Positions 31,060-34,709 of a DNA stretch of 64,000 nt are shown here, piece after piece. The position numbers and the translations under genes were made by a program. The stretch is taken from assembly GCF_963506605.1 (NCBI RefSeq), contig NC_083281.1:13206001-13270000 (forward strand). The letters are read 5' to 3'. The stretch is from Zootoca vivipara (Eukaryota). The notes under the pieces were generated by a model that worked only from the letters and a program-made list of their open reading frames with translations, ran no database searches and had not been told where the DNA came from. Position 1 is the first letter of the stretch, and each line of letters opens with the position of its first letter.

Positions 31060-31300
31060 GCTCGCCTTCCTCCCAGCACCGAGAAGGGCGGCGCGTCAGC
31101 AGCCTCGCCTAGCCAATCCCCCTCCGCGTTTTTCAAGGCGGCGGCTGGATTGGCTGATCCGACCGATTCGCACGGGCGCTGGGGATTGGCCGCCCAAGAG
31201 CAGGCTGCGGAAGGCGGCACAGTCAAGCGACGGACTTCGGCGCGCGTGCGTGAGGGAGGAGAAGCGAGAGACCGGCCCGTCTTTTCCTCGTTCTCAGACT
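31060..31300 (+). promoter_or_regulatory. Small CpG island / putative promoter and 5' leader of the CDC7 copy
   Basis: Abrupt AT-to-GC transition at about 31060. CCAAT 31113-31117, ATTGG 31149-31153 and 31185-31189 (36-bp spacing), and GGCGCG E2F-like cores. Confidence 0.65.
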
Positions 31301-31305
31301 GACAG

Positions 31306-32907
31306 ATGAACAAAGAAGTCACTAAGCAGGTTATCAAGACTCGAGAACATCCTGTGAAAGGTACATGGTCTGAACACCCCGATGTGAGGGTAGTTTTTGT
31401 GATGGATGCAGATGAACACCCTCCCTTGCATTGTGAAGACTCTCGTATGAAATACGACCACAGCAAGAAACTGTCAGGAACAAGTGCAGATATTGAACAG
31501 CTTTATCGAGCAGTGCCACAGCTTGCAAATTTGTTCAGAATTAAGGGGAAAATTGGTGAAGGTACGTTTAGTTCTGTTTACCTGGCCATAGCCCAGCTAC
31601 CAGGAGGCCATGAAGAAAAAGTGGCTTTGAAGCATTTGATTCCTACCAATCATCCTGTACGAATTGCTGCTGAAATTCAGTGTCTTATAATAGCAGGGGG
31701 GCAAGATAATGTCATGGGAGTTAGGTACTGTTTTAGAAAAAACGATCATGTGGTTATTGTTATGCCATACTTGGAAAACGAATCCTTTTTGGACATCTTG
31801 AACTCTCTCTCCTTTGAAGAAGTAAGAGATTATATGTTTAATCTCTTCAAAGCTTTGAAGCGTATTCATTACTTTGGCATTGTTCACCGTGATGTCAAAC
31901 CCAGTAACTTCTTGTACAACAGGCAAATGAAACGGTATGCCCTGGTCGACTTTGGTTTGGCGCAAGGAACTCCTGACACAAAAATAGAACTTCTCAAAGT
32001 TATCCAGTCGGAAGCCCAGCAGGAGGGGCCTGAGAGCCTTCATGTTCAACGCTCTGTCTTTGGGGAGAGGAATTTCAATGTCCGCAGTTCTGCGTCTCAA
32101 GGCAATTCCAAACTCATAAAGCAGCCTAGGGTGACAGATATTGCAGCTAGAAAATTACTGGCGAAGAAGACAACTTCAGCTGTGACTAATGGCTTAGTGA
32201 AGAAAACTGCCAGCAGTTATCCAACTAACATGACCTGTGACTGTTATGGAAAAGATAGAGTCTGCAGTGTTTGTCTTTCAAGGTGTCAGCAGGTTGCTCA
32301 AAGGGCTGGTACACCAGGATTCAGAGCACCAGAAGTGTTAACCAAGTTTCCAAATCAAACGACAGCAATTGACATGTGGTCTGCAGGAATCATATTCCTT
32401 TCTCTGCTGAGTGGCCGGTATCCATTTTACAAAGCAAGTGATGATTTAACAGCTTTGGCACAGATTATGACTATTCGTGGATCCAGGGAAACAATTCAAG
32501 CTGCTAAAACATTTGGTAAATCAATACTGTGTAGTAAAAATATCCCAGCGCAGGATTTACGAATGCTCTGTGAAAGGCTGAGAGGAAGCAAAACCAGCTT
32601 TGACATCTCGACAGGTGATGGGCAGATCAACCTTTCTCAGGAACCTCCGTTACAAGCTGAAATCTTCAACATTTCAGAGCCTGCACTTCAGACATCTAAA
32701 AAGCACCTACAGTATCAGAAGCCAAATTGTCATGAACGTGATGGCCTGGTTATTAGAACTTCTGAAAAGCCAGCTGATCTGGAATGGGACAAAGTCCCTG
32801 ATGAGGCCTATGATCTTCTGGATAAACTGCTAGACCTAAATCCTGCTACAAGAATAACTGCAAAGGATGCCTTGCTTCATCCTTTCTTCAAAAATATTAA
32901 GCAGTGA
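31306..32907 (+). CDS. CDC7: Intronless CDC7 kinase (retrogene-like copy), intact 533-aa ORF; ATG 31402 is an alternative start with better Kozak context
   Basis: Motifs [40 protein letters not shown], zinc-binding TCDCY...[22 protein letters not shown] and [21 protein letters not shown] are all in one uninterrupted frame. Vertebrate CDC7 is normally multi-exon and not part of this syntenic block. Confidence 0.95.
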
Positions 32908-34388
32908 AAAGATGCTCGGCTCTGTACCACCAGAAGCATTGGAAGTCACAGTTTCCTTATCTTTTAACGAAATCAAAATCCTTAGAGGGACATTGTTTCC
33001 TCTAAATTGCTTCATAGCTACATCCAACTTGAGGAAACAAAACAAACAAAAACCTTGTCAGCTATTAAACATACTGAAGTCCAAATCAAAGGCAGACTGG
33101 AACAAATGTTTCCCCATGCTCTTACACCATACATTTCTAAATGATTTTAATTTTGTCGTGTCGCTGATGGTGCAATCTGCAGATGCACTGAACCTCCATG
33201 AACCAGCTTGCAACCCACAGTGGTCCCAGTCTGGCCTTGGAACGATACCTGCATGGGCTTCCTTTGGGCTGCCTTGTTCTTGACTTCTAGGAGCACCGCT
33301 TCTTCTTAATCAGCTCCTAATACCTGTACAAATGTGCCTTTACTACGGTATGTGAAGGGTGCTAATGTGAGACTGTGATAGAGAAAAGATTCCCGCTGTA
33401 CTTCTAGCCTCGCAGACCGATAAGTATACTTGAAAACTTGTCCTAGTCATCAAAACACTTTGGAGGAAGAAACAGACAATTCTGAAGTTTTGAGAGCCCA
33501 CAACAGTAGTTTCTAAGGGCTTCGGACTGCAGCTTTTGAATGCATGCATTTTAGGTGGAACGAGAAGCAGCTGTAAACATGGTTACTCTAGTGCAGGCAT
33601 TCCCAAACTGCGGCCCTCCAGATGTTTTGGCCTACAACTCCCGTGATCCCTAGCTAACAGGACCAGTGGTCAGGGAAGATGGGAATTGTAGTCCAAAACA
33701 TCTGGAGGGCTGAAGTTTGGGGATGCCTGCTCTAGTGTGTCCTAGCCAACTTAAAAGACCCACGTTTCCCTTCTTTCCAGGAGCTGGCAGGTGGGGAGTG
33801 ATGCCCCTGCAGATGCGGCCTCCCAGCCTCAGCCTTTCTGTCGCTTACTGGAACATTTCGGGCAGAATGGTGGTCAGGACAGGGCAGTGCCAGCACCCCG
33901 GTGGAGCCAACCTGCCACTCCTGCTGGTGCAGCCATGCCACTCTGTGCTTGCTGCTCCCTTGCCTCACCCACATCAGCATTACTGATGCCAGCTGGCCAG
34001 ATCCGCAGTGTTGCCCCTCCCTGCCAGCCGTTCCTGTTCCCTATCCATGTCACTATCAAGACTGAACAATTTTCATATAATTAAATGGCCATTCAGCCTA
34101 ATAAGGCTTAGTGCTTGCCGTAAAGATTTGCCCACCCCGCCCCCCGAATTTTTGGAGTTTAAGGAAAATATGGATTGTGTTCTTGTACTCTTTGAAAACT
34201 TCCACCTTTCCTCCCTGCTCTGCTAGCATTTGAGATGGGTACCAGTTGCTCCGCACTGTGTGCCATAATATCTACATATGCAAGACCTGTGTATTTGTCT
34301 GCTTGTCAAGCACTAGCTTACGTTATTTTGTATATGTACGATTGTCGGAACAATTTGATTTTCCTAGAATGACCAAAAGTAAACTTAT

Positions 34389-34571
34389 TCCTTCAGTAGC
34401 ACCTTAAAGACCAACTAAGTTTTTATTTTGGTGTGAGCTTTTGTGAGCTTCAGGTATCTGAAGAAGTGTGCATGCACATGAAAGCTCATACCAAAAGTTG
34501 GTCTTTAAGGTGCTACTGAAGGAATTTTTTTATTTTGCTTCGACTCAGACCAACACGGCTACCTACCTGTA
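34389..34571 (+). mobile_element. Short Penelope-like element (inverted plus direct pseudo-LTR) containing a minimal hammerhead ribozyme motif
   Basis: Perfect 17-bp TSD accaaaagtaaacttat (34372-34388 and 34572-34588). Inverted arms tccttcagtagcaccttaaagaccaact / agttggtctttaaggtgctactgaagga. Confidence 0.8.
34453..34492 (+). ncRNA. Minimal type I hammerhead ribozyme motif (Penelope-type)
   Basis: GGUAU-CUGAAGA-A-GUGUG-CAUG-CACAU-GAAA-GC-UC-AUACC: stem I GGUAU/AUACC, core CUGANGA and GAAA, stem II hairpin, and palindromic AGCU in place of stem III. Confidence 0.75.
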
Positions 34572-34577
34572 ACCAAA

Positions 34578-34617
34578 AGTAAACTTATATTTCATACACT
34601 AAAAAAAAGAAAAAAAA
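34578..34617 (+). terminator. Variant poly(A) signal AGTAAA and remnant genomic poly(A) tail of the CDC7 retrocopy
   Basis: AGTAAA 34578-34583 is followed 17 nt later by A8-G-A8 (34601-34617), then the candidate TSD tattgtatcgtat (34620-34632), which matches tattgtattgtat (31047-31059). Confidence 0.7.
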
Positions 34618-34709
34618 GATATTGTATCGTATAACTACATGAGTATATAAATCTTAGATTTGTAAATAATTTCATTATATATAAGTCAAGATCTATATCA
34701 GTCTAAGAA

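What the first reader, a model, noticed from the sequence alone, without database searches (positions are those of the whole stretch)
31060..34632. Intact, intronless CDC7 retrogene inserted between SERTAD1 and SERTAD3
Seen: one uninterrupted 533-codon CDC7 ORF with every catalytic motif, about 1.7 kb of 3' UTR, AGTAAA plus an A-tract, and a 12/13 flanking direct repeat. Known: vertebrate CDC7 (the DBF4-dependent replication-initiation kinase) is multi-exon and is not in the mammalian PRX-SERTAD-BLVRB-SPTBN4 block. Inference: this is a retroposed copy. The flanking repeats have decayed while the 1.6-kb ORF has no stop or frameshift, which suggests selection. It could be an extra lineage-specific CDC7 or a replacement for the parent gene.
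Basis: partly seen in the sequence, partly recalled or inferred. Interest (0 to 1): 0.88.

Follow-up and report, generated by a model that had tools for sequence, protein, structure and literature searches.

The report
Young intact CDC7 retrocopy in lizard
A lizard (almost certainly Zootoca vivipara) carries a recent, still-readable processed copy of the DNA-replication kinase gene CDC7 between two SERTAD genes; it is real, but nothing measurable here shows that it is used or kept by selection, and public annotation already lists it as "CDC7-like".

Summary
Window 31306-32907 (+) is one uninterrupted 533-codon CDC7 reading frame inside a 3.56-kb insert (31060-34619). The insert ends in AGTAAA and a 19-nt A-tract and is flanked by a 12/13 direct repeat. 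It is a processed copy of the natural short CDC7 splice form that lacks a 54-residue piece of kinase insert 2.

It arose in the Zootoca lineage after the split from Lacerta and Podarcis. In the tree it is sister to the Zootoca parent (96/94 support), and the two share six derived states.

The parent gene is intact and lies on another chromosome-sized record, so this is not a replacement. RefSeq already lists the protein as "CDC7-like [Zootoca vivipara]" (531/533 identical).

The argument for selection is weak:
- The copy has 14 amino-acid changes and one in-frame deletion, against 7 changes in the parent (p 0.13).
- Three to five of those changes hit sites that are invariant or nearly so in 132 other CDC7 proteins, which neutrality predicts.
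- A neutrally evolving copy of this age would stay open with probability 0.04-0.25.

Its first 241 nt are CpG-rich with three CCAAT boxes, so an inherited promoter is possible but untested.

dN/dS, expression and empty-site tests could not be run.

The parts
31047..31059 (.). 5' target-site duplication TATTGTATTGTAT
   Evidence: 12/13 match to 34620-34632, at the exact boundary where GC content jumps from 27% to 67%
31060..31300 (+). GC-rich, CpG-island-like first 241 nt of the insert (parent-derived leader, possibly part of the parental core promoter)
   Evidence: GC 0.67, CpG obs/exp 1.08 (29 CpG), against 0.37-0.42 in the rest of the insert. CCAAT at 31113 and ATTGG at 31149 and 31185, 36 bp apart. 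GC boxes at 31086 and 31190. Promoter function is inferred, not tested.
31306..32907 (+). longest ORF, 533 codons plus stop (as in the RefSeq 'CDC7-like' model)
31402..32907 (+). CDS from the conserved CDC7 start (Met33), 501 codons plus stop; likely true coding region
   Evidence: every parental protein that starts at the canonical Met aligns from MDADEHPP; context gtgATGg at 31402 against cagATGa at 31306.
32020..32025 (+). junction QQ|E where the 54-residue kinase-insert-2 cassette of the long isoform is absent
   Evidence: the same junction occurs in the annotated short isoforms of Zootoca (P0125), Lacerta (P0001), Podarcis (P0122), Anolis (P0010) and a turtle (P0022)
32908..34600 (+). 3' UTR-derived sequence, 1693 nt
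33585..33738 (.). 154-nt palindromic interspersed repeat inside the 3' UTR
   Evidence: inverted repeat of 67-nt arms, 85% complementary; sub-threshold mir-5408-like hairpin on both strands.
34372..34588 (.). 183-nt repeat element (34389-34571) flanked by a perfect 17-bp duplication ACCAAAAGTAAACTTAT, which duplicates the AGTAAA signal
   Evidence: D3, I2. A related copy lies just outside the insert at 34710-34795 (D1, D2).
34578..34583 (+). AGTAAA poly(A) signal, 18 nt before the A-tract
34601..34619 (+). A-tract (17 A, 2 G), remnant of the poly(A) tail
34620..34632 (.). 3' target-site duplication TATTGTATCGTAT
19108..19839 (-). neighbouring SERTA-motif gene (SERTAD1-like single coding exon)
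   Evidence: PF06031 at 3e-15; translation.
   Evidence: nearest named clusters are all SERTA-domain proteins, score 0.93-0.94. No Pfam hit at E<=0.01.

Best explanation
This is a young processed retrocopy of CDC7.

Origin. A mature mRNA of the natural short CDC7 splice form, which lacks a 54-residue cassette in kinase insert 2, was reverse-transcribed and inserted by LINE-type target-primed reverse transcription. It landed in the intergenic DNA between two SERTA-family genes. This happened in the Zootoca lineage after its split from Lacerta and Podarcis. The multi-isoform parent remains intact on another chromosome.

Coding capacity. The copy still encodes a complete, probably catalytically competent DBF4-dependent kinase.

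Evolution since insertion. The protein has changed about twice as fast as the parent, including at positions invariant in all other vertebrate CDC7 proteins sampled. This pattern is what relaxed or absent constraint predicts. My reading is an intact but so far unconstrained retrocopy (an 'ORF-intact processed copy') whose open frame is due mainly to its youth.

Shown: identity, structure, isoform of origin, lineage of origin, retention of the parent, and the rate and site pattern of amino-acid change. Inferred: LINE-mediated mechanism, neutrality, promoter content of the 5' end.
For: Retrocopy anatomy:
- Continuous ORF.
- AGTAAA, A-tract and a 12/13 target-site duplication at the exact ends of the insert.
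- Junction identical to the annotated short isoforms in five species.
- Window protein on a 97.17-Mb record, Zootoca parent on a 96.06-Mb record.

Lineage:
- ML tree puts the copy sister to the Zootoca parent, support 96/94.
- Six derived states are shared only by the copy and the Zootoca parent, including a 2-residue deletion.
- The two lacertid clusters hold no 'CDC7-like' protein from Lacerta or Podarcis.

Constraint:
- 14 substitutions plus a 1-codon deletion on the copy's branch, 7 on the parent's. Tree branch lengths are 0.029 against 0.014.
- 3/14 changes fall at sites invariant in 132 other CDC7 proteins (S115N, H158N, P332Q) and 5/14 at sites at least 95% conserved. This is not different from the neutral shares of 37% and 55% (p 0.28 and 0.18). 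The parent has 0/7 at such sites (p 0.004 against neutral).
- P(no stop, no frameshift | neutral) is 0.04-0.25.
- The two known alleles (window protein and XP_034974421.1) differ by two amino-acid replacements.
Against: - The frame is open in two independently recorded alleles, and at the higher indel rates assumed the chance of that is only about 4-5%.
- All catalytic, Zn-finger and substrate-reading residues are kept.
- Hits on conserved sites are somewhat fewer than the neutral expectation (5 of 14 at sites at least 90% conserved, against 63% expected, p 0.05). The relative-rate excess over the parent is not significant (p 0.13). Partial purifying selection therefore fits as well.
- The 5' end keeps an undecayed CpG-rich, CCAAT-box segment that could drive transcription.
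- RefSeq models it as a protein-coding gene.
- No synonymous-site data, no expression data and no orthologous loci were available.
Confidence: 0.58

Rival explanations
1. It is a functional retrogene: an expressed second CDC7 kinase, short-isoform only, kept by purifying selection that may be relaxed. It could be driven by promoter elements carried in its own 5' end, and may have a tissue-specific (for example germline) or altered-substrate role.
For: - The 501/533-codon frame is intact in two alleles, and its chance probability under neutrality is low to moderate, 0.04-0.25.
- All essential kinase, Zn-finger and P+1-reading residues are retained. Their roles are described in PMC7416108.
- The missing KI-2 segment lies within the 228-345 deletion that leaves human CDC7 fully active in vitro (PMC7416108).
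- The 5' 241 nt are GC 67% with CpG o/e 1.08, three CCAAT boxes and two GC boxes. About 3% of expressed mammalian retrocopies inherited a parental promoter (PMC4772013).
- RefSeq has a protein-coding model for it.
- Slightly fewer hits at conserved sites than neutrality predicts.
Against: - Three substitutions fall at positions invariant in 132 other CDC7 proteins, and two more at sites at least 95% conserved. One is next to the P+1 reader Arg (P332Q = human P372) and one is the P+4 pocket Ser (S115N = human S96).
- The amino-acid rate is about twice the parent's.
- Both differences between the two known alleles are non-synonymous.
- No holder of the stretch is on record as RNA, though that table itself says this does not show silence.
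- No orthologue is annotated in other lacertids.
Confidence: 0.32
2. The copy is older than it looks. It was inserted before the lacertid radiation and later homogenised by gene conversion from the Zootoca parent, so degraded or intact orthologous copies should exist in other lacertids.
For: Nothing direct. The dating rests on six shared states and one tree node. Pseudogenised orthologues would be invisible in protein databases.
Against: - The shared derived states are spread from residue 76 to residue 448, not in one tract.
- The parent and the copy lie on different chromosome-sized records.
- The target-site duplication has one mismatch in 13 and the A-tract is still recognisable.
- CpG content of the 5' end is undecayed.
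Confidence: 0.05
3. It is an assembly artefact or cDNA contamination rather than a genomic insertion.
Against: - A target-site duplication and A-tract sit at the exact insert ends, within ordinary AT-rich intergenic DNA.
- The insert carries interspersed repeats, one with its own 17-bp duplication.
- The same gene, with two residue differences, is in an earlier RefSeq record.
- Ten runs from three studies hold at least half of the stretch's sampled words, and the best hold 0.71-0.80.
Confidence: 0.02

Closest known systems
Vertebrate CDC7 (DBF4-dependent kinase catalytic subunit), short KI-2-skipped isoform (e.g. Zootoca vivipara isoform X2 XP_034979395.1; Lacerta agilis isoform X3 XP_033007506.1)
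   Same: The copy is 94-96% identical in protein over the shared length. It has the same exon-skip junction, all catalytic motifs, the Zn-finger cysteines and the R373/R380 equivalents.
   Different: It is intronless and lies on another chromosome. It has 14 private substitutions and a 1-codon deletion, some at otherwise invariant sites. A 32-codon in-frame 5' extension comes from the leader.
RefSeq model 'cell division cycle 7-related protein kinase-like [Zootoca vivipara]' XP_034974421.1
   Same: It has the same length (533 aa) and is 531/533 identical, so it is the same locus already annotated by the automatic pipeline.
   Different: It differs at two residues, A59T and V128I. The record name does not say it is a retrocopy, and no paper describing a CDC7 retrogene was found.
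Mammalian ORF-intact retrocopies and retrogenes, including the ~3% with parentally inherited promoters (Carelli et al. 2016, PMC4772013)
   Same: It is a processed, intronless copy with poly(A) and a target-site duplication and an intact frame. Its parent-derived 5' sequence has CpG-island character.
   Different: It is in a squamate. Expression, transcription start and selection are unmeasured here, so membership among functional retrogenes is open.

Membership tests
CDC7 protein kinase family | Ser/Thr kinase catalytic core: G-loop, VAxK Lys, alphaC Glu, HRD, DFG, APE | tested here: met
   Pkinase at 3e-46; 6ya6 at E 6e-185; K109, E123, H194-R195-D196, D215-F216-G217 and A341-P342-E343 all fall in invariant columns
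CDC7 protein kinase family | KI-2 zinc finger (four Cys) and the P+1-reading Arg373/Arg380 | tested here: met
   C311, C313, C320, C323, R333 and R340 are present. Their roles are described in PMC7416108.
CDC7 protein kinase family | Activation by and binding to DBF4; phosphorylation of MCM2-7 | not testable with these tools
   No DBF4 sequence of this species was at hand and no assay was possible
Processed retrocopy (LINE-mediated retroposition of an mRNA) | Lacks the parent's introns | tested here: met
   The ORF runs continuously through the point where parental isoforms differ by a 54-residue cassette, and it matches the skipped form exactly.
Processed retrocopy (LINE-mediated retroposition of an mRNA) | Poly(A) signal and A-tract at the 3' end | tested here: met
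   AGTAAA at 34578-34583, A-tract at 34601-34619
Processed retrocopy (LINE-mediated retroposition of an mRNA) | Target-site duplication flanking the insert | tested here: met
   13 nt, 12/13 identical
Processed retrocopy (LINE-mediated retroposition of an mRNA) | Located away from the parent gene | tested here: met
   the records holding the two proteins are 97,165,297 and 96,056,580 bp long. This assumes both belong to one assembly.
Functional retrogene | Intact reading frame | tested here: met
   but the chance probability under neutrality is 0.04-0.25
Functional retrogene | Purifying selection (dN/dS < 1 on the copy's branch) | tested here: inconclusive
   No parental DNA was available. The protein-level proxies (rate twice the parent's, p 0.13; 3-5 of 14 changes at conserved sites, not different from neutral) neither show nor exclude constraint.
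Functional retrogene | Transcription of the copy itself | not testable with these tools
The run table lists no holder on record as RNA, which it says is not evidence of silence.
Functional retrogene | Conservation of an open frame in orthologous copies of other species | not testable with these tools
   No squamate genome collection is on hand. No 'CDC7-like' protein from other lacertids appears in the clusters.

The most novel reading that the evidence does not exclude
Zootoca vivipara has a working second CDC7 kinase encoded by a roughly 10-million-year-old retrogene. Its 241-nt CpG/CCAAT leader brought enough of the parental cell-cycle promoter to be transcribed on its own. It makes only the short KI-2-skipped isoform. 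It is diverging in substrate-contacting positions: S115N in the P+4 pocket, P332Q next to the P+1-reading Arg, R327C after the zinc finger. That would be a natural experiment in duplicating an essential, normally single-copy replication-initiation kinase.
Probability: 0.2. Interest if true: 0.6.

Novelty: new member of a known kind. Interest (0 to 1): 0.3.

Why it matters
CDC7 is an essential kinase that is single-copy in the vertebrates sampled here. An extra intact copy is uncommon, and no CDC7 retrogene was found in the literature searched.

If the copy were expressed and constrained, it would be a clean, datable case of a retrogene that may have carried its own promoter. It would also offer a natural set of substitutions at otherwise invariant CDC7 positions.

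As the evidence stands, it is an ordinary young retrocopy already in RefSeq. Its main value is as a well-defined marker and a candidate for a simple dN/dS and RNA-seq check.

Tried and rejected
1. The look-up of encoding contigs, tried on XP_034974421.1 (P0124) and also meant for the parental locus, was closed. No parental DNA could be fetched, so there is no dN/dS, no UTR or promoter comparison and no exon map.

Later sequence searches used 32950-35400 or other ORFs only. Scripts on the coding sequence were local computations.

4. Literature: 'CDC7' with 'retrogene' gave three papers, none about a CDC7 retrocopy. None of the retrocopy papers listed for the second search mentions Zootoca vivipara.

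5. 'Replacement of the parent' is rejected, because intact parental proteins are annotated in Zootoca.

6. 'In-frame deletion in kinase insert 2' is rejected in favour of a natural alternative splice form seen in lizards, turtles, birds and marsupials.

7. Rfam with permissive thresholds over 32950-35400 found only sub-threshold miRNA-like hairpins from the interspersed repeats and no hammerhead family.

8. The shares of about 0.27-0.33 held by small runs of organisms A, B and C could not be interpreted without laying them. They could be parental mRNA, relatives or repeats.

9. Scans of the metagenome, viral and prokaryote collections were not spent, because they cannot hold lizard chromosomes.
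Full report
**What is there.** Window 31306-32907 (+) is a single 533-codon ORF. Human CDC7 crystal-structure chains match it at E 6e-185, over all three ordered parts of the kinase, and Pfam Pkinase matches at 3e-46. Every catalytic motif is present: the four zinc-finger cysteines of kinase insert 2, the two arginines that read the substrate P+1 phosphate, and the APE motif (roles from PMC7416108).

The ORF lies in a 3.56-kb insert, 31060-34619. The insert begins with a sharp jump from 27% to 67% GC. 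It ends with AGTAAA (34578-34583) and a 19-nt A-tract (34601-34619). It is flanked by TATTGTATTGTAT / TATTGTATCGTAT (31047-31059 and 34620-34632; 12/13).

Two refinements apply:
- The conserved CDC7 start is Met33 (ATG 31402, context gtgATGg). The 32 codons before it are leader sequence that happens to be in frame from a weak-context ATG.
- The flanking repeat has only one mismatch, so it has barely decayed.

**Neighbours.** A SERTA-motif ORF lies at 19108-19839 (-) (Pfam 3e-15). A second ORF at 37771-38718 (-) has only SERTA-domain protein clusters as its nearest named relatives. The insert is intergenic, on the opposite strand to both, about 11 kb from the first ORF's start.

**Whose gene, and is it known.** The exact protein of the window is already in NCBI/UniRef, on a 97,165,297-bp record. 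It is 531/533 identical to XP_034974421.1, 'cell division cycle 7-related protein kinase-like [Zootoca vivipara]'. The window is therefore almost certainly Zootoca vivipara, and the locus is already modelled as a protein-coding gene by RefSeq. The same species has ordinary CDC7 proteins, 556 aa (P0128) and a 502-aa short isoform (P0125), on a 96,056,580-bp record. The parent is retained, so the 'replacement' idea fails. No paper describing a CDC7 retrogene was found.

**Which transcript was copied.** The copy lacks 54 residues of kinase insert 2 between ...SEAQQ and [11 protein letters not shown].... This is not a deletion. Annotated short isoforms of Zootoca, Lacerta, Podarcis, Anolis and turtles have exactly the same junction, and similarly short isoforms (about 506-514 aa) are annotated in birds and marsupials. 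The template was the exon-skipped mRNA. In human CDC7 the deletion 228-345, which covers this segment, leaves in vitro activity intact (PMC7416108).

**When.** In an ML tree of 24 sauropsid CDC7 proteins the copy, with its older RefSeq allele, is sister to the Zootoca parent (UFboot/SH-aLRT 96/94) inside lacertids. Six derived states, among them a two-residue deletion, are shared only by the copy and the Zootoca parent, and they are spread from residue 76 to residue 448. The retroposition therefore happened in the Zootoca lineage after its split from Lacerta and Podarcis. No 'CDC7-like' protein of other lacertids is in the two clusters that hold all lacertid CDC7 proteins. Pseudogenised orthologues would not show there.

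**Is there evidence of selection.** With Lacerta and Podarcis as outgroups, the copy's branch has 14 amino-acid substitutions and a one-codon deletion, and the parent's branch has 7. Tree branch lengths are 0.029 and 0.014. The relative-rate excess is not significant (chi-square 2.33, p 0.13).

Against 132 other CDC7 proteins, three of the copy's substitutions hit universally invariant sites:
- S115N, which is human S96, a hydrogen-bond donor in the substrate P+4 pocket.
- H158N, which is human H139, just after the hinge.
- P332Q, which is human P372, next to the P+1-reading R373.

Five of the 14 hit sites at least 95% conserved. Under neutrality the expected shares are 37% and 55%, and the observed shares do not differ from them (p 0.28, 0.18). 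The parent's seven changes avoid such sites altogether (0/7, p 0.004 against neutral) (residue roles).

If the 14 replacements are taken as neutral, they imply about 19-20 substitutions in the 1503-nt CDS (about 1.3% divergence). That gives 0.6-0.8 expected nonsense changes and 0.7-2.5 expected frameshifts. The probability of a still-open frame is 0.04-0.25, depending on the indel rate assumed.

The open frame is thus mildly, not strongly, surprising, and the pattern of change looks relaxed. The two recorded alleles differ by two replacements.

**The 5' end.** The first 241 nt (31060-31300) have GC 0.67 and CpG obs/exp 1.08, against 0.37-0.42 in the rest of the insert. They carry CCAAT/ATTGG boxes at 31113, 31149 and 31185, 36 bp apart, and two GC boxes. 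This looks like part of a CpG-island cell-cycle promoter. It could mean that the template RNA started upstream of the main start site, so that the copy brought promoter elements with it. That route is documented for about 3% of expressed mammalian retrocopies (PMC4772013). It is inference only: the same sequence could simply be the parent's 5' UTR, and at this age undecayed CpGs do not prove hypomethylation.

**The 3' UTR.** It holds a 154-nt palindromic repeat (33585-33738) and a 183-nt element (34389-34571). The second has a perfect 17-bp duplication that also duplicates AGTAAA. Whether these predate the retroposition cannot be told without the parental UTR.

**What could not be done.**
- As a result dN/dS, expression, junction-spanning reads and empty-site tests are all open.
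- The run table shows ten runs from three studies holding at least half of the sampled words (best 0.71-0.80). That speaks for a real genomic insertion in several samples. No holder is on record as RNA, which the table itself says is not evidence of silence.

**Verdict.** This is a real, young, Zootoca-lineage retrocopy of the short CDC7 isoform, intact and possibly self-promoted, and already annotated as 'CDC7-like'. Its functional status is undetermined, and the measurable evidence leans to relaxed constraint. I confirm the promoter-like composition. I re-read the 'deletion' as a splice isoform. I found no Rfam hammerhead match at E<=1 in the 3' region.

Noticed in passing
window 29487-30350 (+): A 287-codon ORF whose translation looks like the C-terminal part of a LINE reverse transcriptase, about 700 bp upstream of the retrocopy. 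It has no Pfam hit at E<=0.01.
   Followed up: partly
window 34372-34804: Two related repeat copies (34455-34531 and 34710-34795, 86-97% identical) bracket the poly(A) site. Rfam at E<=1 gave no hammerhead family here, only sub-threshold miRNA-like hairpins.
   Followed up: partly
window 33585-33738: A 154-nt near-palindrome (67-nt arms, 85% complementary) that matches mir-5408 below threshold on both strands. It is probably a MITE-like interspersed repeat.
   Followed up: partly
window 9844-9986: A run of 143 N (assembly gap or masked). It was left untouched.
   Followed up: no
window 31365-31373 and 31382-31387: Two tiny upstream ORFs (2 codons and 1 codon) in the leader. In Lacerta agilis the first ATG is annotated as an in-frame N-terminal extension (MVRTPRCEGTFV-), whereas here it stops after two codons.
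   Followed up: partly
Zootoca parental CDC7 (P0125/P0128): The Zootoca parent lineage shows 7 amino-acid changes since the retroposition, on top of 4 substitutions and a 2-residue deletion before it. In the tree this is about 0.022 for Zootoca against 0.013 for Lacerta and about 0.005-0.009 for Podarcis. A somewhat faster parent after duplication is possible, but the numbers are small.
   Followed up: partly
one search run table: Small runs of two other coded organisms (B, C) hold about 0.27 of the stretch's words, similar to small runs of organism A. These could be close relatives or subspecies carrying the copy, parental mRNA, or repeats. This is unresolved.
   Followed up: no
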